Positions 30,590 through 53,548 of a stretch of 64,000 nucleotides of DNA are shown in pieces. How positions within the stretch are numbered: the first letter of the stretch is position 1; each line of letters begins with the position of its first letter. Below the pieces are notes generated by a model. The model was not told where the DNA came from. It saw only the letters and a list, made by a program, of their open reading frames with translations, and searched no databases. The stretch lies in the IMG/VR virus record IMGVR_UViG_3300038463_000730, positions 186,001-250,000 of that record; one strand, written 5' to 3'. A program made the position numbers and the translations under genes.

Positions 30590-31351
30590 TTATAGTGCGA
30601 TCAGATCCTTGTAGCTCAAGTTTTTGTTGTCGAGGATAAACTCGTCAAGATCTTTGTATCCAACCGGAACGGATCGAGGCATCAGATTGGCATACGAGCT
30701 ATACTTCTCTATAGCTTTTTCCGTACCTTTTCGGCCCGGATCGTCGTTGTCGAACATCAAGTAGATGTTGTTCGTATATCGCTTGATCAACGCGAGGTGC
30801 TCAGCGCTAAGCGTATGTGATCCGACACAGACGATGTTGTCGATCCCTACGTCGCTGGCCTGCATCGTATCGAACTGGCCCTCCACGACAAAACAACAGT
30901 CATGACGGAGGATACTTGCCTTGGCCTCGTACAGGCCGAATACGTGCAGCCCCTTCTCGAAGGACGTATTCTTGTACTTCGAGATCTCACGCTCTTTTTG
31001 GTCTTCACTAGAAAGTAAAGTCCGCCCGACAATCGCGACGATGTCTCCGTAAACATCGCGATACGGCATGATCAAATTATGATTCTCGAACGTATTGACC
31101 ATCACCCATTGATAAAGGCCAAAATTCGTAAGCTTGCCATAGCGAACCTTTGCGGCAACGAGCTTATCTTCACTGACCAGAGCAAGCAGTGAGCCGAGCT
31201 TTTCACTATCAGGAAAATAGCCGAATCCCCATTTCTTCTGGGCCGCATCCGAAAGCCGTGAGTCAAGGTACCGTTTAACTTCCCGCGCGACAGGGTCTTC
31301 TCTAAGGAGAGTACTGCATCCGGCGATAATGGCATCAAACTCTTGCATCAA
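30590..31351 (-). CDS. dnaG: DNA primase DnaG catalytic core/TOPRIM, lacking the zinc-binding domain
   Basis: YLDSRL..WGFGY, MPYRD..G.IVAIVGR, KYKNT, VVEGQFD, FDNDDPG, KDLDE. Confidence 0.88.
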   Translation of the reverse strand: MMQEFDAIIAGCSTLLREDPVAREVKRYLDSRLSDAAQKKWGFGYFPDSEKLGSLLALVSEDKLVAAKVRYGKLTNFGLYQWVMVNTFENHNLIMPYRDVYGDIVAIVGRTLLSSEDQKEREISKYKNTSFEKGLHVFGLYEAKASILRHDCCFVVEGQFDTMQASDVGIDNIVCVGSHTLSAEHLALIKRYTNNIYLMFDNDDPGRKGTEKAIEKYSSYANLMPRSVPVGYKDLDEFILDNKNLSYKDLIAL

Positions 31352-31940
31352 ATGTGCTCGGGCTCTGAATAAAGGTTCCTAGTTTAGTAAACGGAAATAG
31401 CGCCGTGACTTTTACCGCCCATTTATTCGGGTCGATGGTCCATCGTTTAGAAACGTCATTCGTCCTAACCCAGCCCGCAAGCGCAACAAGTTTAGGCGTT
31501 CTTCTCTGATTCTCATCGGCAACAGTGAATGCCGCGACGTAAAACGCACGATCATGTAGTTCACGTGGCGGGATGACAAGATTGAGAGACGGTATTTTAG
31601 CGAGAGAATTCGTGTGCGTAGTTTTAACATCCACGAGTAACGCTGTCCCATCTCCCAAAGTAAGAGTGTCATCCTCACCGTCGTCACCCTTCCCGGTTTT
31701 CACGTACGTATCGTACTTCCGATCCTTCAGAGTCCGAAGCTTGTCGTACGTTTCCTTCGTATCCCCGTAATGCCAGACGTACCACGCAACCTCTCCGAAC
31801 AATCCAGTGTACTGGAAATCAAGTCTCGACGCTTTAGCCAGATCGCTCTTTTTAAGATTCGAGAATCCCCCGAGGTCGTCCCTCGGAGCCATCTCCGCAA
31901 CAAAAGCTTTCATCTCATCTGTTACGTTGATTATCTTCAT
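31335..31940 (-). CDS. Hypothetical protein, possible PD-(D/E)XK nuclease
   Basis: GEVA...DDGED...VDVKT pattern. Confidence 0.4.
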   Translation of the reverse strand: MKIINVTDEMKAFVAEMAPRDDLGGFSNLKKSDLAKASRLDFQYTGLFGEVAWYVWHYGDTKETYDKLRTLKDRKYDTYVKTGKGDDGEDDTLTLGDGTALLVDVKTTHTNSLAKIPSLNLVIPPRELHDRAFYVAAFTVADENQRRTPKLVALAGWVRTNDVSKRWTIDPNKWAVKVTALFPFTKLGTFIQSPSTFDARV

Positions 31941-32526
31941 CTCGTTTCCTCTGTTCTCGTATAATAGCTGCCTGGCGCATTCTATCTATTGTTTCAGGTG
32001 AATGTTTCTTGCCAAACCTCGGGCTTTGTTCTTTTGGTAAGCCTTTATTCCACGCCGGTTTATTTGTATGCTTCCCTTTTCTGGTTGATGGCTTACCGGC
32101 TTTAGCAATGGACATCTGTGCTATCGACTCTGTAGAATGCTTCTTACCTTTCATTGGATGAGGCATTCCTTGCGCGTACAAGGCCTTACGAGTTTTTGAA
32201 ATCTTTCCTTTTGTTTCTTCGGCCATTATACAATGACCATCTCCACCTGGCTCAATATTATATCCGAATTTCCTATCAGAAGATTTGAATTGCGCAATCA
32301 ACTGTATTTCGGCCGAGTCAATGTCCAACTGCGTTGGATACGATGATATCGTTTCAAATATAAAATTTGAAATCCCATTTTTTCGCATGGAATTGTAAAG
32401 CGGATGCACCTTACCATGTCGAGCATGGTATTTATGCTCGGGCCACCGCTGCTTCGGTGAAACCGTTTGTCCTATATAAACTTTGTTATTTACAAGGTTA
32501 GTAATTTTGTATAACCAGAATTCCAT
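31915..32526 (-). mobile_element. Free-standing GIY-YIG homing endonuclease with NUMOD3 repeats
   Basis: WLYKITNLVNNKVYIGQT, GYNIEPGG, HPMKGKKHS, PRFGKKHSPET. Confidence 0.9.
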
Positions 32527-32861
32527 TACGGTTGAAATTTGTTTTTCATAGCGCTCTTAAACATCATCGCGAAATGCTTGTTGACGTTCAATACAGTATG
32601 ACAGCGCGCACATGTCAGCTCGTCACCTTCAATCAACGGAGTATTTTCCGTTTTACACTTCGCGCATTTCACCGCGTAAGGTGTTCTGGTCTTGATATTG
32701 GTCATGACCTGACCCATCGATTTCATCTGGCGTTTCGCGAACTCGGTAATGGTCGTGATTGGCCTGTTACACTCGCCGCAAAGCACTTCGTTCGTGATCA
32801 CATCAAGAGCCGGGGTTTGCTCCTTCATACACCCCTTATTGTTACACCATGTTCTAAACAT
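32526..32861 (-). CDS. Double zinc-ribbon protein
   Basis: CNNKGC, CGEC, CAKC, CARC. Confidence 0.65.
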   Translation of the reverse strand: MFRTWCNNKGCMKEQTPALDVITNEVLCGECNRPITTITEFAKRQMKSMGQVMTNIKTRTPYAVKCAKCKTENTPLIEGDELTCARCHTVLNVNKHFAMMFKSAMKNKFQP

Positions 32862-33905
32862 TTATTTCTCCTCTTTCAATACTTCAATGACTTTCGTTAG
32901 ATCGGATGGATACTGTACAGACAATTGTACTCGATGATTTCCATTCTTCGACCGGATACCACATCCCGGAACCACAATTTCATCCAAATGTTTCGACCGT
33001 GGCTTAACTTCTACTTCTTTATCCCCATAGACTGTCGGAACTTTTAACGTTCCACCTTGCAACATGTCCAGCAGCCCAATCCCGAGTTTAGATACGACAT
33101 CCACGCCTTCCAAATGCATATCCGGGTCCGGCGTTACACTGATCTGCATGACAGCATCCAAATACTGTGGCTTGTTGAACAACAAACAGAAGTTTCCCAT
33201 TCCCGGTAGCCGTAACGACACGCCGTTTGAAACTCCCGCTGGAATATTCACCTTACAAGTCCTCATAACCCCGAATGTACCGGTGCCATGACACGAATTG
33301 CACATAACTTTATCTTTCGTGATGCCGTAACATTTCGTGCAGATACGCGAATGCGAAACTTTACCGGTCGCCGTGACGCCCGAATCAATACGCCCCTTGC
33401 CACCGCACCCCCCACATGGCGGCTTATCAACTTGCGTTCCGCCTTTTCCAGCACATGCATTGCATGACTCCTGGCGCTCGTAACTTACAACACGATCCGT
33501 TCCACGGACCGACTCTGCAAACGAAACGGTCTGATTAATGATAATTTGCGGAACTTGATTTACAAACGGCTTTCCGAACGGAGAGTTCTGAAAATTGAAA
33601 AACTCATGGTTTGAGAAGAATTCCTTGAACAGATCGTTCATATCCTGTGCATTAGAAGGATCGACCTTACGAGTATATTGACCAGGAGGCTGATTCGTTC
33701 CACCGAATGGGGTTGGATGAGTCGGATGATAGTTTGTAAGATACGAGTGAGCAACATTGATCTGTTTGAACCGATCTTCTGCTCCCGGCTCTTTGTTGAT
33801 ATCAGGATGATACTTCTTAGTCAGCTCACGATACCGTTTCTTGATCTCATCTTCTGTAGCTGACGGATCAATACCCAGAATCTTGCATGCTTCTTGCCGG
33901 TTCAT
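32862..33905 (-). CDS. dnaJ: Chaperone DnaJ
   Basis: J-domain with HPD, four CxxCxG zinc repeats, C-terminal domain. Confidence 0.93.
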   Translation of the reverse strand: MNRQEACKILGIDPSATEDEIKKRYRELTKKYHPDINKEPGAEDRFKQINVAHSYLTNYHPTHPTPFGGTNQPPGQYTRKVDPSNAQDMNDLFKEFFSNHEFFNFQNSPFGKPFVNQVPQIIINQTVSFAESVRGTDRVVSYERQESCNACAGKGGTQVDKPPCGGCGGKGRIDSGVTATGKVSHSRICTKCYGITKDKVMCNSCHGTGTFGVMRTCKVNIPAGVSNGVSLRLPGMGNFCLLFNKPQYLDAVMQISVTPDPDMHLEGVDVVSKLGIGLLDMLQGGTLKVPTVYGDKEVEVKPRSKHLDEIVVPGCGIRSKNGNHRVQLSVQYPSDLTKVIEVLKEEK

Positions 33906-34474
33906 TTCTTCTTCTTAGCTTTCTTGACCTTCAAAATCGGTCTCGCTCCAAGATGATATGCCAGCGCAACCGCGATACCATCGGCAATATCGTAGCTTTC
34001 TACCATCACCTCATTGGTCTTGGTTCGCTTATTGAATTTGTACTGCCATGGGAAAGTAATCCCCAAGTGATGCTCGACGACAGACGGAATGTCTTCCTTT
34101 TTGGGGCGGTCTTTCCCAACTCGAATCTTAGAACGAATACTGTTCACATTCAACAGACTAGGTTCGACATGGCGATGATCACTACAAACCATTCCAACAA
34201 AACGATTGTAGATGGCTAGCTTAATGATCGTTTTGGCACCAGACTGACCCTGCATGAATTGTACGATATCTTCGATCGCAACTACATTGGGCTGATAACT
34301 ATCGAGTAATATCTGGATATCTGTTCGTACCTGACCGAGACTAGAGAAAATAGTCGTGTCCTTCGGAGGCTTAATATACCCGCATTTGACCAGCGTAGGT
34401 GGCGTAGTAACGGTATCGAGCACGCTCCACCCAATTGTCGTGCTAGAAACATCTAATCCAAGGATCGTGACCAT
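33902..34474 (-). CDS. ruvC: RuvC-like Holliday junction resolvase
   Basis: ILGLDVSSTTIGW, VAIED, DIADGIAVA; start moved to ATG 34474. Confidence 0.85.
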   Translation of the reverse strand: MVTILGLDVSSTTIGWSVLDTVTTPPTLVKCGYIKPPKDTTIFSSLGQVRTDIQILLDSYQPNVVAIEDIVQFMQGQSGAKTIIKLAIYNRFVGMVCSDHRHVEPSLLNVNSIRSKIRVGKDRPKKEDIPSVVEHHLGITFPWQYKFNKRTKTNEVMVESYDIADGIAVALAYHLGARPILKVKKAKKKK

Positions 34475-34489
34475 ACATAGCAATATATC

Positions 34490-34523
34490 AAAGAAAAAGC
34501 CCCGGAATTGCTTCCGGGGCTTT
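34490..34523 (-). terminator. Rho-independent terminator after the SSB gene
   Basis: GCCCCGGAA-GCAA-TTCCGGGGC followed by TTTTTCTTT on the minus strand. Confidence 0.88.
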
Positions 34524-34544
34524 ATCATTTCCTATCAGGCTTGA

Positions 34545-35261
34545 TTAGGTCGTTGCCGGGAACTTCGGAAACTCCAAGTCCGGATCGTCCTCTTCGTCAG
34601 CCACGTTGCTCTGAACCGCGCGAGACGCTGCCGGAGCCGCTGTCCGCGTTGCCGCTACAGGTGCAGGTGCATTCGGGCGCGCAGGAGTTCCGTTGAGGAT
34701 CTTATCCAAACGGTCCTGGACCTTCTCAGGGGTCGGAGGAACGCAACGCTTACGAAGGTCATCCGTATCGATCGTGTCACGGATCTGAACATCGTTAGCG
34801 CTCAGCGGTTTCGGAAGCTTCGGAGTCACGTGGTAGTAGTTCGTCGCTCCACCGTTCGGATCAACTTGGATGTTGATATCGTACTTGATCGGCTCGCCCC
34901 ACTCGTCGTCTTTCGTCAATTCCTGAATCGCCTTGAACACCGCGATTCCGACGTCGAGAATCTTGTACGACTGAGTCTTACGATCAATCGCGCCCAAGAG
35001 CCAACGACGCTTCGGCTTGTCACCGAGATCACACAACGGACAGGTAAAGCCCGGTCCCTTGCCCGCACACATCACACGCTGCCCAAACCCCGGATCACCC
35101 TCTTTCTTGTAACGGTGAACCGTGTACTGGTTCGGGGCTGTCACGATGCGAACAATGTTCGGCCCCTTATCCAATCGAAGGAACGTGTCCTTGTTATTGT
35201 CACGACTCGGCATAATGTCGGTCTGAACTTCACCCCAAGCTACTTCGCCATATTTCTGCAT
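34545..35261 (-). CDS. Single-stranded DNA-binding protein (gp32-like)
   Basis: FLRL..G.NIVRIV, H..C..CPLC zinc site, GEPIKYDI, acidic C-tail DEEDDPDLEF; start ATG 35261 behind GGAG. Confidence 0.75.
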   Translation of the reverse strand: MQKYGEVAWGEVQTDIMPSRDNNKDTFLRLDKGPNIVRIVTAPNQYTVHRYKKEGDPGFGQRVMCAGKGPGFTCPLCDLGDKPKRRWLLGAIDRKTQSYKILDVGIAVFKAIQELTKDDEWGEPIKYDINIQVDPNGGATNYYHVTPKLPKPLSANDVQIRDTIDTDDLRKRCVPPTPEKVQDRLDKILNGTPARPNAPAPVAATRTAAPAASRAVQSNVADEEDDPDLEFPKFPATT

Positions 35262-35391
35262 TTCAATCTCCAAATGATCATATTAGATCGTTGCTGTTTT
35301 GTTTCTATTGATTGTTAAGATAAGTGTCTTACTATTCTTGCGATACAGGTCTTACTTCTTGACTAAGCTGCGATAAAAACTCATATATGTC

Positions 35392-35763: not shown

Positions 35764-35771
35764 TTTCTTCC

Positions 35772-36083: not shown

Positions 36084-36121
36084 GATGTTCCTACTATTTA
36101 TATATCAGGACGATGTATAAT

Positions 36122-37120: not shown

Positions 37121-37171
37121 TCATTTCTCCTTATTTATGCCTCTGTGAGGCTGGTTGGAATTTGCTTACTA

Positions 37172-37606: not shown

Positions 37607-37674
37607 GTGTGTTTTCTCCAATATCTAAACTGGAATTCGACGCTAACCAACTCGTCAAACGCTCCAACAAACTA

Positions 37675-38729: not shown

Positions 38730-38741
38730 GCCTTAACTATA

Positions 38742-41700
38742 TCAATTGTCTTGCGGATCTTCATCGAATTCTATTAACCCGGCGTCAAATAGTTCGCTTT
38801 CAATATCGTTCGTTATCTCTTCCTGGGTAGCTGTTTTATCCAGTTCTTTCTCTTCTTTCGGGCCTTTGGGCTGGCGAAGATTGACCTTCTTTTTCTCCTT
38901 GAAATCTGCTGGAAGAGCCGGTGGGGGTGCGTAGGAAAAGATGTTTTCTAGGACCGCACCGGTATCATCTTCATAGATATTGATTGTCCCGTTGAAATGG
39001 ATACAGATCCCCTCCTCAAGTTTCTGTTTCCCTCCGCTGAACAACTTAATTCGCTCGTTTACGAGATCGAGCCCCTCGGGGAACATCGTCAATGACATCT
39101 GGTCGCCATAGACGTCCTCGATGGTCAGTTTCGCCATATCACGACCGAGATACTTTGATCCTTCCTTCTTCACCTTAAAAACGAAGATGCTTTTGATCTC
39201 CGCCTTCATGGAAGGAATCCGCTCCTTGTCGTTCATACTCTTCAGTGTCTTGACTCGGATCGATCCCTTGTCATCGAAGAATGGAACGAACGCATCCTTC
39301 TTTCCACAAGAGAATCCTTCGCCTGCCCAAAGCTTCTCCAGAGCGTACCGTTCGCTCAAGCTCCACTCGGGCTCATCCGGCCACGGATAATTCATTTCCG
39401 AAACGGCCGGGTTATTCTTCTTTAGCCACGAATCAAGCTTCTTTCGATAGTCTTCGCAGTAGAGATAGATCTGACGTCGTTTCAGACCGAACGAATCGAG
39501 ACAGCCGGTCGCTGCCAAGACCTTAATGGATTTGGAGTTCAGCTTCTTTTTCTCGCATCGAACCATGAAGTCGAAGAAGTTACGGAACGGGCGTTTGTCA
39601 ACAATCTCCTGGATCGCATCCTTACCAACGAATGCCATCGCGTTGAGACCAGTAACGATCGTCTTCGCATCTTTGATCGTGTAGCTGATATCAGAGTGGT
39701 TGATATCAGGCGGCATGATCACGATTCGCTGACGTCGAATCTCGGTCTTGATCTTCTCGATGTTGTTCTTGGCAGGTTTGGATTTCGAACGAATCTCAGA
39801 CTTCAAGTTCGCCAGCAAGAATTCGAGCGGATAATGCGCCTTCAAGTAGGCCGTGTAATAACTTGTCATCGAATACAGAATCGAGTGGGACAGATTGAAT
39901 CCGTACCCCTGAAACTTATCGACAACCTCATCCCAGATCTGGGTCGAGACCTTCGGGTCGATGTTCTTGTTCTTCTTGGCGTCATCGATGAAGTCTTGAC
40001 GCCACTTTGCTGCCTTCTTCGGGTTCTTGCCCTTCTCCTTGGTCAATTTACGAAGACGATCGGCCTCGTGCAGGGTCCACCCGGCCACGTCCTGAGCAAG
40101 ATACATCAAGCACTCTTCGTAGAGTCCGAATCCAAACGTTCCACCAAAGGCGCGTTGGAGCGAAGGATCCAATAGTTTGAAAGGCAGCCTTCCATCTTTC
40201 GTCTTAACATAATCTTCGCGTATGTCTCGTGCAGAAGGTCGAGCAAGCGAGTTGATAGCGCTAATATCTTCAATCGACTGTGGTTTTATCTTCTTGCACA
40301 GATCAATCGTTCCCGAGCTAGTACCGAGCTGAAAGACGCAGAATGTATCGCCTCGTGAAAGTAGGTCATAAGTCGCTTGATCATCTAACGGCACATCTAT
40401 CTGTGTAGGCGGGAGCGACTTGCCAGCTTTCGCAGCCAGATCAAAGGTCTCTTTGATGATGTCCAAGGTTTCCAACCCAAGGAAGTCCATCTTAACGAGA
40501 CCGTTTTCTTCGGCTCGGTCCTTATCATACTCAAGCGCAATTGTACCCTCTTTATCTCGACGTAACGGTACCAAACCAGCCAAGGGACGTTGAGAAATGA
40601 CGATCCCGGCCGCATGCGTGGCCCACGCCCGGTAATTGCCACAAATTGCTGAATACTTTTTAATCTTAGGGTACTTCTGCACGTAAGCAGCAAAGAGCCC
40701 AGACTTCTCAATAGCTTTGTCAAAGGTCTTTACATCTTTCGGGCTAGGAATCGAATTAGCAATGTCCTCACCGAGTTTGACCGATGCTTGCCTTGACCCA
40801 GCAAGCTCACAAGCGCGAGTAATGTCTTTCGCATAGACCTTCGGAGTGATGGTGTTGAGATTACTAACGTGCGCCACTTTGTCATCGCCATATTTGTTTC
40901 TCACGTAATCCAGAACTCGGTTACGACCATACGGAGCGAAGTCTGAGTCAATATCCGGGAAACTTGACTTCTCTTTGTTATGGAAACGTGCGAAGATTAG
41001 TTTGTACTGGATCGGATCGGCACGGTGGATATCCAGTAGATATCCAATGAGCGAACCGCCAACCGAGCCACGTCCCGGACCGGTCAAGATATTGTTCTTC
41101 CGAGCCCATTCAATGAAATCGGCAACAATCAGCATGTAACTGCTGAATCCGTGGTATTCGATAACATCAATCTCTTCTTTGAGACGAGCTTCGTATTCCG
41201 CACGACGCGAATCATTCGGCATCCGCTTGTAGGCGTCCTTCTCGCAAAGATAACGCATGTACAGCTTATCTTGCTCAAGAGAGCGCACAGAGTCATTCTG
41301 AGGCCTCGCGACCCATGCCTGAAACTCTTGGAAGTCCGCTTGGTCCTGAACCGGGAAAATCGGCAGTTCTTTTCCTGATGGGTTGGAATACTTCGGATCA
41401 ATCCAGACCGGTTCCTCACACAGGTTGGCGAAGTGTACCGTGTTGTCGATCCAGCCCTCAACCTCGCCTTCGTATTTGCGATTGAAGAATGCCAGGATGT
41501 CATCTGCTGAGTGTAGATACAGATCCGATATTTCGTACTTTAGTCGCGCATTCGAGTATTGCGGTTGCCCGGCCCCAATTGCAAGCATCGCATCATGCGT
41601 ATCAGCATCCTCCTTGTGGAGGTAGTGCGCATTTGATGTCGGTACAATACGTACGCCATGCTTCTTAGCAAGTCGTATAGTATGAGCATTGGTGAAGTCC

Positions 41701-42272
41701 TGATCGATCGAATCGTTGTAGTTAGATGCAAACCTACGCAGATTGTTCGGTTGGATTTCTAGCCCAAAATTGTCTCCAAAAATCCCCACCAACTTTTTGA
41801 TCGTTTCCTCGGCCTCGACGAACTTCTTGTTGTTCAACAATTGCGCCACGATCCCGCCTCCACAAGCGGTCAGGCAGATTACTCCATCGGAGTGCTGCTC
41901 CATCAGCTTCCAGTCGATGATCGGATAGACACGCTTTCCGTACGTGCTAACTCCGTGATCGAACCCGGCACGGTTCAGGAGGAGGAGATTCCTATAACCA
42001 ACCGAATTCTTAGCAAGGAGAATGACATGACGAATCTTGTCTTCGGACTTTGACGCATCGTTGACAAAATAATACTCACACCCCACGATAAACTTGACGC
42101 CCACCTCTTTAGCAGCCTTGGCGGCATCCCAAACCGCAGAGAAAGTACCATGGTCCGTAATGGCAAGTGCCGGTTGGCCGAGTTCTTTCGCACGAGTAAA
42201 CAACTCCTTCGGAGTGGGCATGGCGTCAAGCATCGAGAAGTTTGAGTGATTGTGAAGCGAGACGTATTTCAT
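38742..42272 (-). CDS. dnaE: DNA polymerase III alpha subunit, no intein
   Basis: SLHNHSNFSMLD (PHP), GPGRGSVGGS, PDIDSDF, KMDFLGL, YGFNLSH. Confidence 0.97.
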   Translation of the reverse strand: MKYVSLHNHSNFSMLDAMPTPKELFTRAKELGQPALAITDHGTFSAVWDAAKAAKEVGVKFIVGCEYYFVNDASKSEDKIRHVILLAKNSVGYRNLLLLNRAGFDHGVSTYGKRVYPIIDWKLMEQHSDGVICLTACGGGIVAQLLNNKKFVEAEETIKKLVGIFGDNFGLEIQPNNLRRFASNYNDSIDQDFTNAHTIRLAKKHGVRIVPTSNAHYLHKEDADTHDAMLAIGAGQPQYSNARLKYEISDLYLHSADDILAFFNRKYEGEVEGWIDNTVHFANLCEEPVWIDPKYSNPSGKELPIFPVQDQADFQEFQAWVARPQNDSVRSLEQDKLYMRYLCEKDAYKRMPNDSRRAEYEARLKEEIDVIEYHGFSSYMLIVADFIEWARKNNILTGPGRGSVGGSLIGYLLDIHRADPIQYKLIFARFHNKEKSSFPDIDSDFAPYGRNRVLDYVRNKYGDDKVAHVSNLNTITPKVYAKDITRACELAGSRQASVKLGEDIANSIPSPKDVKTFDKAIEKSGLFAAYVQKYPKIKKYSAICGNYRAWATHAAGIVISQRPLAGLVPLRRDKEGTIALEYDKDRAEENGLVKMDFLGLETLDIIKETFDLAAKAGKSLPPTQIDVPLDDQATYDLLSRGDTFCVFQLGTSSGTIDLCKKIKPQSIEDISAINSLARPSARDIREDYVKTKDGRLPFKLLDPSLQRAFGGTFGFGLYEECLMYLAQDVAGWTLHEADRLRKLTKEKGKNPKKAAKWRQDFIDDAKKNKNIDPKVSTQIWDEVVDKFQGYGFNLSHSILYSMTSYYTAYLKAHYPLEFLLANLKSEIRSKSKPAKNNIEKIKTEIRRQRIVIMPPDINHSDISYTIKDAKTIVTGLNAMAFVGKDAIQEIVDKRPFRNFFDFMVRCEKKKLNSKSIKVLAATGCLDSFGLKRRQIYLYCEDYRKKLDSWLKKNNPAVSEMNYPWPDEPEWSLSERYALEKLWAGEGFSCGKKDAFVPFFDDKGSIRVKTLKSMNDKERIPSMKAEIKSIFVFKVKKEGSKYLGRDMAKLTIEDVYGDQMSLTMFPEGLDLVNERIKLFSGGKQKLEEGICIHFNGTINIYEDDTGAVLENIFSYAPPPALPADFKEKKKVNLRQPKGPKEEKELDKTATQEEITNDIESELFDAGLIEFDEDPQDN

Positions 42273-43557: not shown

Positions 43558-43822
43558 GGCTCTCAAGAGCATAAAAGCAATAGGCAATCTTCGCCTTCTC
43601 AATCGCCGCGGATTCCTTGTACGGCAATCCCAATCCCTTCGCCTCTTCCACAGCCTTGGTCAGCGCCTCGTCTTCCTCCTTGGCTCTTTCGATCTCAACC
43701 AAATGCCCGTGAGATTGAAAGACCTTTTTCTTAATTTCCTCAGTATCCATTGAGTCAATCGACTCGCTCCAACCCTGAGGAAGAATCTTCTCTTTGCTTT
43801 TCGGAAACGCCTTATCACTCAT
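43535..43822 (-). CDS. Small coiled-coil hypothetical protein
   Basis: AAGGA RBS; overlaps the trigger-factor stop. Confidence 0.6.
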   Translation of the reverse strand: MSDKAFPKSKEKILPQGWSESIDSMDTEEIKKKVFQSHGHLVEIERAKEEDEALTKAVEEAKGLGLPYKESAAIEKAKIAYCFYALESRGVDISK

Positions 43823-45146
43823 GTGTATGTCCTTCGTGTCCTGTATGACCGTGGTCTTTGTGTTCGTGACTATGTTCGTGATTTATGTGGTCAACTAGTT
43901 TGCAAGTTGTCACCAACCAGTTGAGAACGCGCTCGTCGCGTATTCTTCCAAGCAATACCGGCAAGCTCCCACTCTTCTGGAGATCCTGGAACGCCTTCTC
44001 GACATCCCCACTCTTGCCGTTCCGGGCTTGCATTTGAGCCAAGTGAAACCGGACCAATTGAAAAGCCTCTTCATCCGAAAGCTGTGCCTCTGGCTCGACT
44101 TCACGGATCTTTTCCAGAACCAACGAAAGTTTGATGCTTTTCTTCGCTTCATTCAGGAACGATTCTTTTTCCTCGTCCGTGAGCTTGTCCCATTCTTTTT
44201 TCGCCATCTTTGATTTGATTTGAGCTTCAGATGACAACAACCAATCCGGAATGGGAATGTCGTGTCCCTCAACCAACCGATGGGACACCTGAACACTGAC
44301 CAGCGAATTTCGGTGCTCGTCAACGCGCGTCGTCGCTACTTGCGCGACGTGCGTACGTAGGTCGTCCAAGTCCTTCATGTTCAGGCGTTTGGCCAACTCG
44401 TCATCCAAGGCGGCTGGAGTCGTTCGCGAGCCCATACAGACCTCGGCCTTGAAGTGGATCGTTTTCCCTTTGAATTCCTCCGAAACATTCGGAGGTGTGA
44501 CGTAATCAAATTCGCGTACGTCACCCATCTTCATTCCAAGAAGATTGTCGTCGAATCCCGGTAGTGGAGATTTTCCGACGTGAACAACCTCTTTCTTTGC
44601 GGTCAGATCCTTGCGAGCAACTCCATCAATCGTTCCTTCGTAATCCAGGAGAATCGAGTCCCCGACCTGAACGAAATCATCATCTGTAAAAGGAACCGAA
44701 TCACCATTCCGCTCGCGCAAATCCTGCAAGATTTTCTCGCTGAATTGGCTAATTGAAATCGGCTCGGCCGGGCGGGGAATTTCGAAATCGCGATACTTAT
44801 TCAATACGACGGTTGGTTTGACTCGCATTGTGAATTCACAAGTGAATTTGGAATCCGTCAGATTCAACATCGAAAACTCCGGCATCCCGAGAGCTTTCAT
44901 GTTGCGATCATTTAGAACACCAATAAACGCTTCCTCAGCCAATACCTCGCGAAGTCGATTTTCGATCTGCTTCTTGTATCGAATCTTAATAGCGTCAAGC
45001 GACGCTTTCCCAGGACGAAAGCCAGGGACGTTAACGCCTTTAAATTCAGCCAGTACCTCAGTTCGCTTAGAGACAATCTTCTCAAGATCAGCCTCGGCAT
45101 GAACCGAAACTTTGCAGTACTCCACTTCATTGACAGCGAATTCCAT
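43815..45146 (-). CDS. tig: Trigger factor with His-rich C-terminal tail
   Basis: VPGFRPGKA ribosome-binding signature; FKBP domain (GD..LDYEG.IDG..LPGFDDNLLGMK.G); LDDELAK; start ATG 45146 behind GAGG. Confidence 0.92.
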   Translation of the reverse strand: MEFAVNEVEYCKVSVHAEADLEKIVSKRTEVLAEFKGVNVPGFRPGKASLDAIKIRYKKQIENRLREVLAEEAFIGVLNDRNMKALGMPEFSMLNLTDSKFTCEFTMRVKPTVVLNKYRDFEIPRPAEPISISQFSEKILQDLRERNGDSVPFTDDDFVQVGDSILLDYEGTIDGVARKDLTAKKEVVHVGKSPLPGFDDNLLGMKMGDVREFDYVTPPNVSEEFKGKTIHFKAEVCMGSRTTPAALDDELAKRLNMKDLDDLRTHVAQVATTRVDEHRNSLVSVQVSHRLVEGHDIPIPDWLLSSEAQIKSKMAKKEWDKLTDEEKESFLNEAKKSIKLSLVLEKIREVEPEAQLSDEEAFQLVRFHLAQMQARNGKSGDVEKAFQDLQKSGSLPVLLGRIRDERVLNWLVTTCKLVDHINHEHSHEHKDHGHTGHEGHTHE

Positions 45147-45174
45147 TCTTAACCTCTTCGTTCCATATATCGAG

Positions 45175-45996
45175 TTACCAACTAACAGGTCCGTGATAAC
45201 TATCACGGTAGACGAATTTCCGTCCTTCGTCACAGCTCTCTAAATAATCGCAGTACTTACAAAGCGGAGTCGGATTCGCACGATAGAGTTTCTCAGACTC
45301 AATATCGTCAGCATATTTGATCAGTTTCTTTTCGACATCGAGAATTTGTTTGACATCAAACTCTTGCGTAATATATTCCCAATCGTGGCGAATCAAAATG
45401 TACGAACCGCGAACCTTCTTGATCGTCGGGTCCTCAAGAAGAAGTACATAAGCATACGTCAACAACTGGAACATATCCTTCAGATAACGCTTGTCCTTAG
45501 TTGTCTTGTAATCGCAGACGTGCAAGATGCCATCCGGGTCTAACTGAATACGGTCGATAAAACCAATTAATGTTAATCTGTTTTGCACTGGCAACTCGAA
45601 CGCCTTCTCAACCGAAAGAATCGTAGCTCCGGTCTTCGGATCGGTCTGCCCCGGCGTCGCAAACGGTTGTTGACCGACTTTCTCTAGATAGAGAGAAAGA
45701 GCGGCAAACGCTTCCTTCTTTTGCTCGCGAGATAGCTTGTCTTTAAACTCCTCAACGGCAAGCTTAAAAGCTGCTTGCATCTCCTCGTGGCGATGCTTGG
45801 TCGAGCCATCTAGATAGAACTTATGAAAAGCTTCTAGCGCCCGATGGACGAATTTACCGTAGGTAAGGTGATCCCAATCTTTCTTCGGGAGGCGATCGAT
45901 GTAGTTGAACTTGAACTTCTTCTTGCAGTCTTGAAAGGTTTTCGACTTCGAAACGCTCAGTTTAAGAAGGGCTTCTGGCTTAATTAGCTCTGACAT
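45175..45996 (-). CDS. PD-(D/E)XK RecB/Cas4-like exonuclease
   Basis: S.SK..F..C, G..VH..LE, GFIDRI, DYKT, QL..Y, CKYCDY..C. Confidence 0.85.
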   Translation of the reverse strand: MSELIKPEALLKLSVSKSKTFQDCKKKFKFNYIDRLPKKDWDHLTYGKFVHRALEAFHKFYLDGSTKHRHEEMQAAFKLAVEEFKDKLSREQKKEAFAALSLYLEKVGQQPFATPGQTDPKTGATILSVEKAFELPVQNRLTLIGFIDRIQLDPDGILHVCDYKTTKDKRYLKDMFQLLTYAYVLLLEDPTIKKVRGSYILIRHDWEYITQEFDVKQILDVEKKLIKYADDIESEKLYRANPTPLCKYCDYLESCDEGRKFVYRDSYHGPVSW

Positions 45997-47019: not shown

Positions 47020-47062
47020 CTGGTCTCCATAGTTGCCATTTGAAATGCGAAAATATGCCGAT

Positions 47063-48076: not shown

Positions 48077-48081
48077 TTTAC

Positions 48082-48399: not shown

Positions 48400-48441
48400 T
48401 CCTCCTCATTAATATGAGGACTTAATGAGTACAATGCCAAT

Positions 48442-48996
48442 CTATTTCTTGTGCTGCTTAATTACGTGTCGATAATAGCTTTCCTTAGTTGGGCCAAGGA
48501 TGAAAGGAAAAGTTGCGGAAAGTCGATCGTCGCCCCAGTCTCCAGCCCAAAGTGTCGCCTCATGCGCCGCCCATTCGATCGGATGCTCGAACGTAATACA
48601 GTCGATCTGATCTTCTGCATAAGACAGCGTAATATGCGGTTTGAAATCTGGATAACGCTTATCATAGTGAATGCCGCACTTATCGAACCCGGCCGTAATA
48701 CACTGTTGAAACTCTAGCAACTCGGGCGAATTGACCCGAGCGATCACCGGCACGCCGATATCCGTGGCGGTCGGAAAACACTTCACCTTGCTTGTCTTTA
48801 GGGTAAACGGTGTTCTCTTGGAGGTTACCTTGTAGATAGCGGCTACAGCCTTCGCAATCTGCGTAATCGAGATGTTTTCACCAAGATAACACACAGTGAT
48901 ATGCATCTGATCAAGTGGAACAGGTGACCCTGGAACCGCGATCTGAGAAAGCAATCGAGCTGTTTCATGTGGGATTTTGATGCCTACAAAACTCAT
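48442..48996 (-). CDS. 2H phosphoesterase (LigT/ThpR; Acb1/T4 57B-like)
   Basis: Two HxT motifs: MHITVCYLG and YPDFKPHITLSY. Confidence 0.85.
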   Translation of the reverse strand: MSFVGIKIPHETARLLSQIAVPGSPVPLDQMHITVCYLGENISITQIAKAVAAIYKVTSKRTPFTLKTSKVKCFPTATDIGVPVIARVNSPELLEFQQCITAGFDKCGIHYDKRYPDFKPHITLSYAEDQIDCITFEHPIEWAAHEATLWAGDWGDDRLSATFPFILGPTKESYYRHVIKQHKK

Positions 48997-48999
48997 AAA

Positions 49000-49557
49000 C
49001 TATCCTCTGAGGACCAAACATGTCCTCAAACATTGAGCTTTCAAATCATCTAGCGTACCGTTGTTGTCAATAACGAAGTCAAAAGCCGAATCTGTTATCG
49101 AGTCCTGGCTTGTTTCGCTGACATCCTTGATTACCAAATGATCGTCTCGTTTAATTCGGACTTTGACAAAGCCCATTTCCGAGACCCTCTTAAACTCTTC
49201 AGGAAACCTTAGGTCTGTGACCATATAAAGATCGAACTGTGTATTCTTGTAGAAATCCTGCTCAAACTTCTTCACCCATATCTCCGGGTCATAACTTCGG
49301 CCTAGCTTTCCGATATCAAGCAAAGATTGCCGATACGTAATGGTCGTGCCTGGAATGATATTAGACCGAAGCTTCGATGCACCGAAGAGCGAGTTCCTCT
49401 CCGCCCCAGGGAACATCGTCATAACGATTTCTTTTATCGGATCCGCAAACGCATACACACGCGCGGCTGTTTCACGTACCAACAGATGGTACTTGAATAG
49501 ATCACCTACCGTATTCTTGCCCGAATTAGCTTTTCCGCTGATTGCGATTTTGTACAT
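49000..49557 (-). CDS. Deoxynucleoside monophosphate kinase
   Basis: IAISGKANSGKNT, AFADPIK, TDLRFPEE, SET, IDNNGT; start ATG 49557. Confidence 0.85.
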   Translation of the reverse strand: MYKIAISGKANSGKNTVGDLFKYHLLVRETAARVYAFADPIKEIVMTMFPGAERNSLFGASKLRSNIIPGTTITYRQSLLDIGKLGRSYDPEIWVKKFEQDFYKNTQFDLYMVTDLRFPEEFKRVSEMGFVKVRIKRDDHLVIKDVSETSQDSITDSAFDFVIDNNGTLDDLKAQCLRTCLVLRG

Positions 49558-49564
49558 GCTTTCC

Positions 49565-51718
49565 TTACCAACTAGATACGATTTTAGCGTACGAATTTCC
49601 GTTCGTGTCCTGCTCAACCAAAATAGCGTGTGAAAACCTATCTTTCACCGTTTTGTTATGCGTAATTAGTACAACCTTGTACTCCTTCTGCAAGATCTTG
49701 ATAAGATCCAAGAATGCGTCCAGCGACTCATCGTCAAGACTCGAATCTACTTCATCGAGCATGAGAAACTTGATATCCACACCAAATATCTTCTGAATGA
49801 CCGTAGACAATCCGATTCGGAGAGCCAGCGAGATAATGAACATCTGTGACCCCGAAAGTAATCCGTACTCTCGTTGGCGCCCGTTGATAATGTAATTGAT
49901 GTCCAGTGTATCTGTCTGCTCGCCTTTTTTGTTCTCCCGGTCAATCTCAAACTGAAGTTGTAACCCGGGCTTCACCTGTCCCACGATGTTATTAGCGTAT
50001 AGTTGGAGATCATCGAGTATGTTATGGATGATAAGCGACGGTATCCCCTTAGAGCCAAAAGCTTGTGCAACCTTAGCATGGAGTAGAAGCTCTTTTTCAA
50101 TTTTCTTGATTTCATTTACAAGAGTATCTCTAACCGTCTTTGCTTCATCAAGCTCTAGCAACTGCTTCTTGTAAGACCGCTCCTCAGCAACCAAATTGGC
50201 CTGTTCGGTATTTAGCAATTGCAACTCTTTGTCCGCCAAAGCCCATGCAGTTTCTTTACTAAAGATGATCGAATTTAGCTCACTGTACCGACTCGTATCG
50301 TAGTTTGATCGCTGTGCTTCGAGTAACGCAATCTCAGTCTCGATCTGCTCAAGTTCGCCCTTCAGCGTCGAGTACTGGTCTTTGTATTCCAGATACGATT
50401 CCTTCTGAATATCAACTTCTTTGATACTAAACTGGATGTCTTTCTTCAGTGTATCAATATTGTGCTGCAACGACACAACCTTGCCGTGCTGTTGACTAAG
50501 ATCCAGGCCTCTCTTTTTCAGCTCGACAATCGTCTCCAGAATCTTGTTGTACTGATCCTGAGCGTCCTGGGTTTTCTTCTGCAAATCCTTTTGACAAGAC
50601 TCCCGGTGTTCTGCTGTCAATGCCTGTCTACAGTGTTTACACTCCGGGCCATTTGGAAGCGGTACAGACCACTCCGCCATCTTTTCTTCAATAGACTTGA
50701 GAGAGGCTCGATGCTCTAGTATCTGTCGAGTTGTTTCCTCTAACTGCGTAGACAGTGCGAACACATCGACCGTGTTTTTACTTTCCAAGTCAGCAAGAGT
50801 TGCCTTCATCGAAATGATCGAATCGAGCTTTGCTTGCGTTGTTTGACGGATTGAATCGAGCTTCTTATAGGCGTTGTCTTTCTTAGACTTGATAAGTATC
50901 AAGCTAGCGTTTGTATTCTTGACTTTATCCAAGAACATCTCGACCGACGACTTGAACTTCAGCATCTCTTCGCGAGATGCTTTCCAATCTTCCTGGATCA
51001 GTTCGACTTTCTTTTTCTGTACTTCGATTTTTGCCAGCGAGGATACGATGTCACCCGCCACGACATTAATATCTGACATTCTCGTAGAGAATCTAGCATC
51101 CACCTCAGAGTAGGTTCCCAGCTTGGCTTTCGTATATATTTCCGTCTCAGCAATCTTTCCTGCTCTTTTCTTGGTCAACTTTTCAAGTTGGCCGTAAACG
51201 GTTAATTGAAGTGCTTCACGAAGTAGATTTTTGCGCTCGGACGGAGTTAACGTGGCCAAGCCAGAAAGATCAGCTTGCCTAAAGTGTATTGAATTGGAGA
51301 ACGCGCGATAATTGATCTTTAGAATCTTCGCCAGAGTCTTCTCCGTGCCGGAGGTGGTCCGCTCTGTAAGGTCTTCCCAATCCACATCATTCTTACGAAA
51401 CAGTCTAAGATCAGCGGAACCCGCTTTGCGGCCACGGGACCGGTCCACTTTGTATGTGTCGCCTCCAACCATAAACACAAACGACACCCTTGTCTTATCA
51501 GAGTCGTCGCGAATGATCGAGTCGATCTTGTCAACACCCACCTCGTTGAAAAGTGCATACGTAATCCCGGAGAAGATCTTACTCTTTCCGACTTGATTGG
51601 CTTTGCGTGTATTGTTCGTAGCTTTCCCAACAACCACGGCAGCATCGAATTGTGTAAAGTCGATCACGGACTTTACGTGACAAGTAAAATTCTCTAACGT
51701 AAGTTCGATCGGGATCAT
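49565..51718 (-). CDS. sbcC: SbcC/Rad50 ATPase
   Basis: NQVGKS, CKHC zinc hook, LSGSQ signature, LMLDE, ITH. Confidence 0.92.
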   Translation of the reverse strand: MIPIELTLENFTCHVKSVIDFTQFDAAVVVGKATNNTRKANQVGKSKIFSGITYALFNEVGVDKIDSIIRDDSDKTRVSFVFMVGGDTYKVDRSRGRKAGSADLRLFRKNDVDWEDLTERTTSGTEKTLAKILKINYRAFSNSIHFRQADLSGLATLTPSERKNLLREALQLTVYGQLEKLTKKRAGKIAETEIYTKAKLGTYSEVDARFSTRMSDINVVAGDIVSSLAKIEVQKKKVELIQEDWKASREEMLKFKSSVEMFLDKVKNTNASLILIKSKKDNAYKKLDSIRQTTQAKLDSIISMKATLADLESKNTVDVFALSTQLEETTRQILEHRASLKSIEEKMAEWSVPLPNGPECKHCRQALTAEHRESCQKDLQKKTQDAQDQYNKILETIVELKKRGLDLSQQHGKVVSLQHNIDTLKKDIQFSIKEVDIQKESYLEYKDQYSTLKGELEQIETEIALLEAQRSNYDTSRYSELNSIIFSKETAWALADKELQLLNTEQANLVAEERSYKKQLLELDEAKTVRDTLVNEIKKIEKELLLHAKVAQAFGSKGIPSLIIHNILDDLQLYANNIVGQVKPGLQLQFEIDRENKKGEQTDTLDINYIINGRQREYGLLSGSQMFIISLALRIGLSTVIQKIFGVDIKFLMLDEVDSSLDDESLDAFLDLIKILQKEYKVVLITHNKTVKDRFSHAILVEQDTNGNSYAKIVSSW

Positions 51719-52908
51719 TTTTCTTCACTCTGCAATTCTTTACGAATGTCCTCTGCTAATGCACAGAAGTCATTGCGTAATGAGTCATCGACGAACTTCT
51801 CGCTCCAACCTTTGATCGCGGCAGACTCGGTCATCGACTGACTGATATTGTCAGCCTTCTTACGAATCAGTTCGAGCTTGCGCGTTTCACTGAACGAACA
51901 AATATGAAAAACACCACGGTCATGCAGATCTGCGTCTATAACTTTCCTATCCACCGAACGCAGATCTGGGCCAGCCAACTGAATTGATACACGAACGATT
52001 GCATTACGCAGATTAGCCTGGAGCGTGTTGAGAAAGTCAAGAACGTATTCCGTTGTATCCCGTGTGCCCATCGGGACGCTAATCGAAATGTCAGAGAGGG
52101 GACGGGTCGGGATCGGTATCGTGTAGAAAGTATCCAGAGCATCTGAGTCTACTGCGATGAGATTTTTAATATGGTCTGTTTCCCCAAAATCAGAAATATC
52201 CATACTTCCGACGTGCGAAAGAAATGGAGTTCCTTCGGATAGTACCTGAGGTCGATGAATATGACCCATCCAAACAAAGTCATAGTCCGAAAATACCGTC
52301 TTCGGACAAAATAGCTCATTAGATGCATCATCGATTTCATCACCGACATAGATTGCACCAGCTATCGTAAGGTGTCCGACAAGTATTTTCTTCGATTCGG
52401 CAGGTATCGAAGCTGCTTCAAATACCAAGCTCTGACGAATAGCCTGAATTGCCTCGTCGTGGGTATCAAGATTAAAAGACCTTCTGTCCCGAAAAGGAAG
52501 AAAGGTAAAAGAAACACCATCAAGATGCACTGTGTCAATAGTATTGTAAATAAAGACATTGTTCAACTCAGCTTCAGCGAAGATATCAAGAGCCGAACTT
52601 GTAAACTGTCCAGTCCGTAGGATGTCATGATTGCCACGAATAATATGGACCGTGATATCACTGGCTTCACACTTTTTCAGCCATGCTAGGAAGATCTTGA
52701 TCAATGTGGGGTGCGGCTTCGGTTCCTCGAACACGTCACCTGTCACGATAATCGTGTCGATCATCAACTCAATACATTGGTCATGTACCCAATTGAGTAA
52801 TGTGATCTGGTCAATTACTCTACTGTTCAGTGCCGAACCAAGACCGGCACGTCCTATTGCCAGACCTTTTCCAAGATGTGGATCACCAAGTATGAGCGCT
52901 TTCGCCAT
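51715..52908 (-). CDS. sbcD: SbcD/Mre11 nuclease
   Basis: GDPHLG, TGDVFE, GNHD, GHIHRPQ. Confidence 0.92.
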   Translation of the reverse strand: MAKALILGDPHLGKGLAIGRAGLGSALNSRVIDQITLLNWVHDQCIELMIDTIIVTGDVFEEPKPHPTLIKIFLAWLKKCEASDITVHIIRGNHDILRTGQFTSSALDIFAEAELNNVFIYNTIDTVHLDGVSFTFLPFRDRRSFNLDTHDEAIQAIRQSLVFEAASIPAESKKILVGHLTIAGAIYVGDEIDDASNELFCPKTVFSDYDFVWMGHIHRPQVLSEGTPFLSHVGSMDISDFGETDHIKNLIAVDSDALDTFYTIPIPTRPLSDISISVPMGTRDTTEYVLDFLNTLQANLRNAIVRVSIQLAGPDLRSVDRKVIDADLHDRGVFHICSFSETRKLELIRKKADNISQSMTESAAIKGWSEKFVDDSLRNDFCALAEDIRKELQSEEK

Positions 52909-52912
52909 TCAG

Positions 52913-53548
52913 TTATTTCTCTAGCTTTGAAAGAATATTCTCGATGACTTCTTTCAGTTTGATCACTTTGCACTTGGCACGTACTTTATCGAGCGTGAAA
53001 CACAGTTTTTCAGCCCATGCGAGAGCTTCCGGGTCATCCATGTGCGATTGGTTGAATAGGCGAATCGCATCGGAAAAGTTCATGATCGGCCGAATGTCTT
53101 CATAGACATACTTCTCTGCTTCCCGAGACAAATCAATATTGTCACCGTGGGAACCGATAATCGAAAATGCTGCCTCACCACGCTTAATGTTGTCATGCAA
53201 CGCGACGAAGCCAACAACATCTCCCGATTCTCCACAGCCATAACATTTGAACCGATTCGTGTCGGGATACCACCAGAACGATGGTGATCGTTCCCGCCCT
53301 TTCGCATGGAAAGGGCACGTGGTCTTTTTCACCTGTTCATCAATGTGATAGCCGTAACGAGCCATCACAATTTTCAGCGGGATTGAATTGGCCTGTTGCG
53401 CTGCCTGATAGGTGACGACGTCTTTTAGTCGTTTGGCATCAAGGCCAGGATCTTGTCCAACATTTCCATTCGGCCCTGGTGTAGGGCCTGCGCTTTCGGA
53501 TCCGGTAGAATCATGTAGCGACTGCATTGGCTTTTGTACTCGTTCCAT
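52913..53548 (-). CDS. Stand-alone primase CHC2 zinc-binding domain protein
   Basis: CPFH....E.SPSF....F.CYGCG..GDVV.FV. Confidence 0.85.
   Translation of the reverse strand: MERVQKPMQSLHDSTGSESAGPTPGPNGNVGQDPGLDAKRLKDVVTYQAAQQANSIPLKIVMARYGYHIDEQVKKTTCPFHAKGRERSPSFWWYPDTNRFKCYGCGESGDVVGFVALHDNIKRGEAAFSIIGSHGDNIDLSREAEKYVYEDIRPIMNFSDAIRLFNQSHMDDPEALAWAEKLCFTLDKVRAKCKVIKLKEVIENILSKLEK

What the first reader, a model, noticed from the sequence alone, without database searches (positions are those of the whole stretch)
30590..53548. DnaG primase split into two genes ~22 kb apart
Seen: 30590-31351 has the catalytic/TOPRIM core with no zinc finger and no helicase-binding tail. 52913-53548 has only the CHC2 zinc-binding domain plus a helical tail. 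Both look intact. Known: the DnaG zinc domain can act in trans on another subunit's catalytic domain. Inference: a two-subunit primase, or a zinc domain repurposed as a regulator.
Basis: partly seen in the sequence, partly recalled or inferred. Interest (0 to 1): 0.6.

Follow-up and report, generated by a model that had tools for sequence, protein, structure and literature searches.

The report
Split DnaG primase of a megaphage
A 435-kb phage encodes its DNA primase as two separate genes, a zinc-finger subunit and a catalytic subunit about 22 kb apart; this split is conserved across a whole clade of giant phages, and the two proteins are predicted to dock through a helical tail found only in this family.

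Summary
Window 30590-31351(-) encodes a 253-aa DnaG catalytic core (DNAG_N + Toprim) with no zinc domain and no helicase-binding domain. Window 52913-53548(-) encodes a 211-aa protein: a disordered N-terminus, a CHC2 primase zinc ribbon and a three-helix tail.

The window lies in a 434,688-bp virus record. Each domain occurs once in it, and no other primase type was found.

The split is old and conserved, not an accident. More than 300 homologues of the core are all about 250 aa. In 14 of 14 related long phage records there is exactly one zinc-ribbon gene of about 200 aa, on the same strand, 19-29 kb upstream of the core gene and usually next to the SbcD-like gene.

A complex model supports binding: ipSAE 0.82, best control 0.00. 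The contact is the tail on the Toprim domain, not the zinc ribbon.

The kind is already known. Iyer et al. 2021 noted standalone primase zinc ribbons beside DnaG Toprim proteins in jumbo phages, and Bacillus phage G carries the same split (gp229 and gp419, 154 kb apart).

Best reading: an obligate two-subunit DnaG-type primase. Moderately interesting; a new member of a known kind, with a newly predicted docking module.

The parts
30590..31351 (-). ORF A, 253 aa: catalytic subunit of the primase (DnaG RNA-polymerase domain = N-terminal subdomain + Toprim). It has no zinc domain, no third helical RPD subdomain and no helicase-binding domain.
   Evidence: Pfam PF08275 and PF13155. PHROG DNA primase families. 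Family profile matches Aquifex DnaG 2au3 residues 106-346, E 2.5e-36. More than 300 homologues, all about 245-265 aa.
30920..31288 (-). DNAG_N subdomain of ORF A (res 22-144), with invariant G109-R110 and K125-Y-K-N-T129.
30635..30892 (-). Toprim fold of ORF A (res 154-239), with invariant E157, D161, D201, D203, D234 and D236.
30770..30805 (-). Predicted docking helix on the Toprim domain (res 183-194, including invariant R191-Y192-T193), contacted by the tail of ORF B.
   Evidence: Interface list of the complex model. Invariant columns.
52913..53548 (-). ORF B, 211 aa: zinc-ribbon subunit of the primase. The start is possibly at M8, window 53527.
   Evidence: Pfam PF01807. Family alignment A3. 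AF2 model. Profile matches 2au3 residues 14-115 and 1d0q. hhalign probability 98% to the ZBD of full-length phage DnaGs.
53138..53377 (-). CHC2 zinc-binding domain of ORF B (res about 58-137; C78, H81, C102 and C105 invariant).
52916..53137 (-). Family-specific three-helix tail of ORF B (res 138-211; F158, S159 and D187 invariant, R163 nearly so). Predicted to dock on the Toprim domain of ORF A.
   Evidence: AF2 models. Complex model interface res 152-184. No likeness to any DnaG part.
53378..53548 (-). Low-complexity, predicted disordered N-terminal region of ORF B plus one helix (res 1-57), with a loosely conserved Gly/Ser-rich then acidic motif.
   Evidence: pLDDT 41-59 for res 1-40. Alignment A3.
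51715..52908 (-). SbcD/Mre11-like nuclease. It starts 4 nt after ORF B, and this adjacency is conserved in relatives.
   Evidence: Pfam Metallophos and phrog_100. Adjacent or overlapping in 10 of 14 related loci.
53614..54288 (-). Conserved unknown gene directly upstream of ORF B, present in all 14 related loci.
   Evidence: no family or atlas match
30110..30571 (-). Sigma-70 region-4-like HTH protein directly downstream of ORF A. A conserved neighbour.
   Evidence: Pfam Sigma70_r4_2. Found next to the core gene in 79 of 81 loci.
38742..42272 (-). DnaE-like DNA polymerase III alpha. It lies between the two primase genes, so both sit in one co-directional replication/recombination block.
   Evidence: phrog_405. 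tblastn hits annotated as DnaE-like Pol III alpha.

Best explanation
ORF A and ORF B are the two subunits of one DnaG-type primase of a roughly 435-kb phage.

ORF B supplies the CHC2 zinc-binding domain, which in known DnaG, T7 and T4 primases reads the template initiation trinucleotide and holds the primer-template. ORF A supplies the catalytic RNA-polymerase domain (N-terminal subdomain plus Toprim).

The covalent ZBD-RPD linker of ordinary primases is replaced by a non-covalent link. The family-specific three-helix tail of ORF B docks on a conserved helix of the Toprim domain of ORF A (around R191-Y192-T193). This tethers the zinc domain near the active site.

The heterodimer then presumably works with the phage's own DnaB-like helicase (G000:C1 about 99.8-101.2 kb) and DnaE-type polymerase.

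Shown: domain content, intact motifs, single copy, clade-wide co-occurrence and synteny.
Predicted: the docking interface.
Inferred: primer synthesis and cooperation with the helicase.
For: - Domain assignment and intact catalytic and zinc ligands.
- The two family profiles cover adjacent segments of one solved DnaG, 2au3 residues 14-115 and 106-346.
- Each domain is single-copy, and no other primase type is present in the complete 434,688-bp record.
- Core homologues (345 hits at E <= 0.001; the 120 best listed are all 241-265 aa) all lack a zinc domain; many lie on 370-470 kb contigs.
- In 14 of 14 related records (4 rated at least 97% complete) there is exactly one PF01807 hit, in a 195-231 aa frame, on the same strand and 18.6-28.5 kb upstream of the core gene.
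- The full-length zinc-ribbon protein, tail included, is conserved at 26-61% identity.
- Complex model: ipSAE 0.82, 0.81 and 0.82 in three runs, best of 3 controls 0.00. That mark was reached by 58 of 80 solved complexes and 2 of 110 mismatched pairs. The runs share at least 55% of contacts and partner pLDDT is at least 74.
- The interface uses three of the four conserved tail residues (F158, S159, R163) and invariant Y101, R191, Y192 and T193 of the core.
- The tail resembles no solved primase part, so the pass is unlikely to be recall of a known complex.
- Published biochemistry gives a functional reason for a docking module. Separated T7 ZBD and RPD make primers only at low efficiency and do not bind template stably (PMC2910064). 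In T4, the ZBD and RPD of gp61 each hold the helicase independently (PMC10359460).
Against: - No experiment exists for this or any related split primase.
- The complex score is a model's confidence. It used my own small alignments (16 rows each), so the calibration holds only roughly.
- Conservation is only weakly enriched at the interface: permutation p 0.06 for the tail and 0.24 for the core.
- The zinc ribbon itself was not confidently placed against the core.
- ORF B's conserved neighbour is the SbcD/SbcC nuclease, not the core gene or the helicase, which leaves room for a recombination role.
- The host's own DnaG could in principle prime phage replication.
Confidence: 0.7

Rival explanations
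1. The two proteins work in one primosome but do not form a stable heterodimer. As with T4 gp61's two helicase-interacting motifs, each binds the DnaB-like helicase separately, and the helices after the zinc ribbon of ORF B are a helicase-binding module rather than a Toprim-docking module.
For: In the T4 primosome, a helix-turn-helix after the zinc ribbon (HIM1) and a C-terminal helix after Toprim (HIM2) bind separate helicase N-terminal dimers (PMC10359460). Foldseek gives weak hits of the ORF B model to T4 gp61 in primosome structures, E about 0.7. In Bacillus phage G the zinc-ribbon gene gp229 lies three genes after the helicase gp226.
Against: The complex model places the tail on the Toprim domain with a high score and clean controls. 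In this clade the helicase gene is about 116 kb from the core gene and about 138 kb from ORF B. The two readings are not mutually exclusive.
Confidence: 0.15
2. ORF B is not a primase subunit. It is a zinc-ribbon DNA-binding accessory or regulator of the adjacent SbcD/SbcC (Mre11/Rad50-like) nuclease or of recombination-dependent replication, and ORF A primes alone or with host factors.
For: The gene order unknown gene - zinc-ribbon gene - SbcD is conserved, with abutting or overlapping stop and start codons, in 10 of 14 relatives. In this window the zinc-ribbon gene ends 4 nt before SbcD.
Against: The zinc domain is specifically the DnaG primase type: profile hits are to primase ZBDs only. 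It is the only such domain in the genome, while the only DnaG core lacks one. The complex model with ORF A passes. Tight packing of co-directional genes is the norm in this genome. In one relative a GIY-YIG gene sits between the zinc-ribbon gene and the next gene, and in three others no SbcD match was found in the short piece fetched.
Confidence: 0.08
3. ORF A is a self-sufficient, zinc-domain-less Toprim enzyme (a sequence-unspecific primase or a nuclease), and ORF B is a decaying remnant of a former full-length primase.
For: A T7 primase without its ZBD still makes random dinucleotides at a very low rate (PMC2910064).
Against: ORF B is intact, with invariant zinc ligands and a conserved tail, across relatives that share only 26-61% identity. 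It is present in 14 of 14 records. That is purifying selection, not decay.
Confidence: 0.03

Closest known systems
Standalone primase-type zinc ribbon plus DnaG-like Toprim primase of jumbo phages (Iyer, Anantharaman, Krishnan, Burroughs, Aravind 2021, Viruses 13:63, PMC7824862)
   Same: A jumbo phage encodes the primase zinc ribbon as a separate protein that accompanies a DnaG-like Toprim protein.
   Different: That paper reports the pattern in one sentence, for its 'group 2' phages (T4-related, family B polymerase). It gives no spacing, partner analysis or mechanism. This phage has a DnaE/Pol III alpha-type polymerase, which is the mark of their group 3.2. Here the split is shown to be fixed across a clade, and a docking tail is predicted.
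Bacillus phage G (JN638751) gp229 'DNA primase' and gp419 'DnaG-like DNA primase'
   Same: A cultivated 497-kb phage with a Pol III-type polymerase. It has one zinc-ribbon protein of 210 aa with a C-terminal extension and one zinc-less Toprim core of 235 aa, encoded far apart. Both were annotated as primase by the depositors.
   Different: Only 24% (core) and 29% (zinc domain) identical to ORF A and ORF B. The C-terminal extension is not detectably related to the tail here. The genes are 154 kb apart on opposite strands, and the zinc-ribbon gene is near the helicase rather than SbcD.
Bacterial DnaG (Aquifex aeolicus 2au3; E. coli, S. aureus, B. subtilis RPD structures)
   Same: Same zinc-ribbon fold and ligands, and the same RPD N-terminal subdomain and Toprim with the same acidic and basic motifs.
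   Different: DnaG is one chain: ZBD, RPD with a third helical subdomain, then a C-terminal helicase-binding domain. Here the ZBD and RPD are separate proteins. The RPD stops at the end of Toprim (aligned to 2au3 up to residue 346 of 407), and no helicase-binding domain was found.
T4 gp61 and T7 gp4 primases
   Same: Minimal phage-type primases built from a ZBD and an RPD of about 230-250 aa. In T7 the ZBD can act on a neighbouring subunit's RPD, and in T4 each domain binds the helicase on its own (PMC2910064, PMC10359460).
   Different: Both are single chains with a flexible linker. T4 gp61 has no detectable match in this genome. Artificially separated T7 domains work only poorly, whereas here separation is the natural, conserved state.

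Membership tests
DnaG-type (Toprim) primase | CHC2 zinc-binding domain (PF01807) with four metal ligands | tested here: met
   ORF B res 75-134, E 3e-12. C78, H81, C102 and C105 are invariant in 16 sequences. Profile hits to 2au3 and 1d0q.
DnaG-type (Toprim) primase | RNA-polymerase domain: DNAG_N subdomain plus Toprim fold with a conserved Glu and a DxD | tested here: met
   ORF A matches PF08275 and PF13155. E157, D201 and D203 are invariant. Profile matches eight solved DnaG RPDs.
DnaG-type (Toprim) primase | ZBD and RPD on one polypeptide joined by a linker | tested here: not met
   They are separate genes 21.6 kb apart. The same holds in 14 of 14 relatives.
DnaG-type (Toprim) primase | C-terminal helicase-binding domain (bacterial DnaG) | tested here: not met
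   No DnaB-binding family in either protein at E <= 0.1. The ORF B tail is unrelated to full-length DnaGs.
DnaG-type (Toprim) primase | Template-directed oligoribonucleotide synthesis | not testable with these tools
   Needs biochemistry.
Jumbo-phage split primase (standalone ZnR + DnaG Toprim; Iyer et al. 2021) | A jumbo phage genome with a standalone primase-type zinc-ribbon gene and a separate DnaG-like Toprim gene | tested here: met
   434,688-bp virus record, with one gene of each kind.
Jumbo-phage split primase (standalone ZnR + DnaG Toprim; Iyer et al. 2021) | Belongs to 'group 2' (T4-related, family B DNA polymerase), where the pattern was reported | tested here: not met
   The polymerase at 38742-42272 is of DnaE/Pol III alpha type. 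T4 gp61 has no match. The replication type fits their group 3.2, as in phage G, which also has the split.
T4 gp61-type bipartite helicase binding | A helicase-interacting helical motif after the zinc ribbon and another after Toprim | not tested

The most novel reading that the evidence does not exclude
This clade has an obligate heterodimeric DnaG primase, in which a family-specific three-helix module on the zinc-ribbon subunit has taken over the job of the covalent linker by docking on the Toprim domain. If so, it would be a natural system in which template recognition and catalysis are physically separable. Stoichiometry, primer length control and helicase coupling could then differ from every studied primase. 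A similar split in the distantly related Bacillus phage G would mean that the split arose more than once or is very old in giant phages with Pol III-type polymerases.
Probability: 0.5. Interest if true: 0.55.

Novelty: new member of a known kind. Interest (0 to 1): 0.45.

Why it matters
All mechanistic work on DnaG-type primases (E. coli, Aquifex, T7, T4) uses single-chain enzymes, in which the action of the zinc domain in cis or in trans has to be teased apart by mutation or truncation. A naturally split, long-conserved version gives a clean two-component system for three questions:

- How does the zinc domain find the active site?
- What sets primer length when there is no linker?
- How is each part coupled to the helicase?

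For annotation, both genes in this large uncultivated megaphage clade should be named primase subunits. Neither should be called 'truncated primase' or 'hypothetical zinc-finger protein'.

Tried and rejected
1. The tail of ORF B as the missing third (helical) subdomain of the DnaG RPD, which ORF A lacks. This idea came from a sub-threshold HMMER alignment to 2au3 residues 359-385. It was not supported by a tail-only profile against PDB sequences, which found no primase. Foldseek and VIA-align on a tail-only model (pLDDT 81) found only generic three-helix bundles and designed proteins. hhalign against full-length phage DnaGs gave a probability of 0.75%.

2. Near-identical or close cultivated relatives. 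Megablast of 6 kb found nothing in 50,697 phage records. tblastn gave only 24-36% hits to ordinary single-chain phage DnaGs.

3. Names for NCBI-sourced homologues on 423-426 kb contigs: none were recorded.

4. Pfam scans for the split in T4-related jumbo phages (Atu_ph07, RaK2, P-SSM2). These were uninformative, because the same models also miss T4 gp61 in the control. I therefore could not check Iyer's group 2 statement directly.

5. Protein atlas searches for the tail and for the upstream 224-aa protein gave no usable lead.

6. A single-sequence word search with ORF B found only 3 proteins. That is a sensitivity limit, not rarity, since genome scans found a homologue in every related record.

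7. A gene fragment or assembly artefact: rejected, given conservation of both short forms across hundreds of contigs.

8. The large representative-protein search, read mapping and sequencing-run tools were not used. No claim here rests on absence of relatives or on expression.
Full report
**What is there.**
The window is G000:C1:186001-250000 of a 434,688-bp virus record that IMG/VR classes as a provirus and CheckV rates 100% complete. All sizeable ORFs in the window run on the minus strand.

ORF A (30590-31351, 253 aa) matches the DnaG catalytic core N-terminal domain (PF08275, res 22-144) and Toprim (PF13155, res 154-239). It matches nothing else at E <= 0.1.

ORF B (52913-53548, 211 aa) matches only the CHC2 DnaG zinc ribbon (PF01807, res 75-134). 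PHROGs assigns both to DNA primase families. For ORF B these include short zinc-ribbon-only families (phrog_18097, phrog_360, phrog_11992), so standalone primase zinc ribbons are not rare in phages.

An AF2 model of ORF B (mean pLDDT 77) shows a disordered N-terminus, a helix, the zinc domain, and a three-helix bundle at res 141-210.

**The two genes are complementary halves.**
A profile of the ORF B family matches Aquifex DnaG (2au3) residues 14-115. A profile of the ORF A family matches residues 106-346 of the same chain, plus seven other solved DnaG RPDs. The break lies at the ZBD-RPD linker.

ORF A ends where Toprim ends. It lacks the C-terminal helical subdomain of bacterial RPDs and any helicase-binding domain.

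The active-site Glu, the DxD, the basic KYxN(S/T) motif and the four zinc ligands are invariant in the family alignments. Both proteins therefore look functional.

**No other primase in the genome.**
- PF01807, PF08275 and Toprim_2 each give one real hit in the whole record.
- Prim-Pol, AEP small subunit and the T7/P4-type zinc ribbon give none.
- The Pfam models missed T4 gp61 in a control, so I also searched with gp61 itself and found nothing.
- HMMs built from the two families find a single copy of each in a six-frame translation of the genome.
- A DnaB-like helicase is encoded far away, at C1 about 99.8-101.2 kb.

**It is a conserved clade feature.**
The word-based protein search with ORF A returned 345 proteins. 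The 120 best are all 241-265 aa with the same domains and no zinc ribbon, and many lie on contigs of 370-450 kb.

A pattern search of IMG/VR gave 80 loci. For the 14 long records that could be searched whole, every one has exactly one PF01807 match, in an open frame of 195-231 aa. From the coordinates, the zinc-ribbon gene is always on the same strand as the core gene and 18.6-28.5 kb upstream of it. In the window the distance is 21.6 kb.

The zinc-ribbon proteins align over their full length, tail included, at 26-61% identity. The cores are 40-54% identical.

Local gene order is also conserved:
- Unknown gene, then zinc-ribbon gene, then SbcD, with abutting or overlapping stop and start codons, in 10 of 14 loci.
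- p347, p111, core gene, sigma-like HTH protein, p169, in most loci; the sigma-like gene is present in 79 of 81.

Between the two halves lie a RuvC, a UvsX/RecA-like recombinase, a DnaE-type polymerase, a PD-(D/E)XK nuclease, SbcC and SbcD. Although 22 kb apart, both genes therefore sit in one co-directional replication/recombination block.

**Do they bind?**
A complex model of the ORF A family with ORF B residues 34-211 gave ipSAE 0.82, 0.81 and 0.82, against 0.00 for the best of three controls. That mark was reached by 58 of 80 solved complexes and 2 of 110 mismatched pairs. The runs agree in at least 55% of contacts, and partner pLDDT is at least 74. Because my own alignments were used, the calibration holds only roughly.

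The confident contacts are not made by the zinc ribbon. They join tail residues 152-184 (including F158, S159 and R163, three of the four conserved tail positions) to core residues 100-101, 148-151, 183-194 and 220 (including invariant Y101, R191, Y192 and T193).

Overall enrichment of conservation at the interface is weak: p 0.06 for the tail and 0.24 for the core.

The tail is a generic three-helix bundle with no detectable relation to any part of DnaG. This makes recall of a solved complex an unlikely reason for the pass, and it also leaves the tail's origin open.

**Mechanism proposed.**
Published work provides three relevant facts:
- The zinc domain is needed for template recognition.
- A mixture of separated T7 ZBD and RPD makes primers only inefficiently and does not bind template stably (PMC2910064).
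- In the T4 primosome, the ZBD and RPD of gp61 each hold the helicase through their own motif (PMC10359460).

A naturally split primase therefore needs something to keep the parts together, and the conserved tail docking on Toprim is a simple answer. I rate the two-subunit primase at 0.7. Within that, I rate the specific tail-Toprim link at about even odds.

A variant in which the helicase is the scaffold is not excluded and is compatible with this reading. A role with SbcCD is suggested only by gene adjacency.

**What is known already.**
Iyer et al. 2021 state that DnaG-like primases of their group 2 jumbo phages tend to be accompanied by a standalone primase-type zinc ribbon (PMC7824862). 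This phage has a Pol III alpha-type polymerase, which defines their group 3.2, typified by Bacillus phage G.

I checked phage G directly. It has one zinc-ribbon protein (gp229, 210 aa, annotated 'DNA primase', three genes after helicase gp226). It has one zinc-less Toprim core (gp419, 235 aa, 'DnaG-like DNA primase'). The two are 154 kb apart on opposite strands.

They are only distant relatives of ORF A and ORF B, at 24% and 29% identity, and the C-terminal extension of gp229 is unrelated to the tail here.

I found no paper that studies such a split primase experimentally. The library does not hold most subscription journals.

**Verdict.**
The finding is a new, large, uncultivated member group of an already noted kind (split DnaG primase of giant phages). 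What is added here is clade-wide fixed synteny and a predicted dedicated docking module. Interest is moderate.

Noticed in passing
window 31915-32526 (-) and 31335-31940 (-); related loci L010-L037: A GIY-YIG endonuclease gene and a 201-aa unknown gene sit directly upstream of the primase core gene. In relatives, GIY-YIG genes occur at varying positions around the core gene (35 of 81 loci), and the 201-aa gene occurs in only 6 of 81. In L092 a GIY-YIG gene sits right after the zinc-ribbon gene. Both primase loci look like landing sites for homing endonucleases.
   Followed up: partly
window 43815-45233 (-): A phage-encoded trigger-factor homologue (Trigger_N and Trigger_C, without a clear PPIase match), inside the replication block.
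   Followed up: no
window 48442-48996 (-): A 2H phosphoesterase matching the LigT/2'-5' RNA ligase families and the Acb1 anti-CBASS family (E 1e-10). A possible counter-defence gene next to SbcC.
   Followed up: no
window 30110-30571 (-): A minimal sigma-70 region-4-like HTH protein is the fixed downstream neighbour of the primase core gene (79 of 81 loci). This may link replication and late transcription genes.
   Followed up: partly
window 53614-54288 (-): A conserved gene of unknown function always precedes the zinc-ribbon gene (14 of 14 loci). It has no family, fold or atlas lead, and its ends are Pro/Gly-rich and of low complexity.
   Followed up: partly
window 53440-53548 (-), ORF B res 1-36: The N-terminus of the zinc-ribbon subunit is disordered but carries a loosely conserved Gly/Ser-rich then acidic motif across the clade. 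It could be a short binding motif for another replisome protein.
   Followed up: no
window 4695-8117 (-): A 1140-aa protein whose residues 106-214 match a head maturation protease family. The portal (14255-16105) and large terminase (17785-19638) lie nearby, so structural and replication modules are adjacent.
   Followed up: no
L104 (BK070142.1, Helicobacter salomonis prophage) 1121-1333 and 1333-2829: The DnaG primase is annotated there as two abutting CDS of 70 and 498 aa. This could be a frameshift or an adjacent split of the N-terminal part. Not examined.
   Followed up: no
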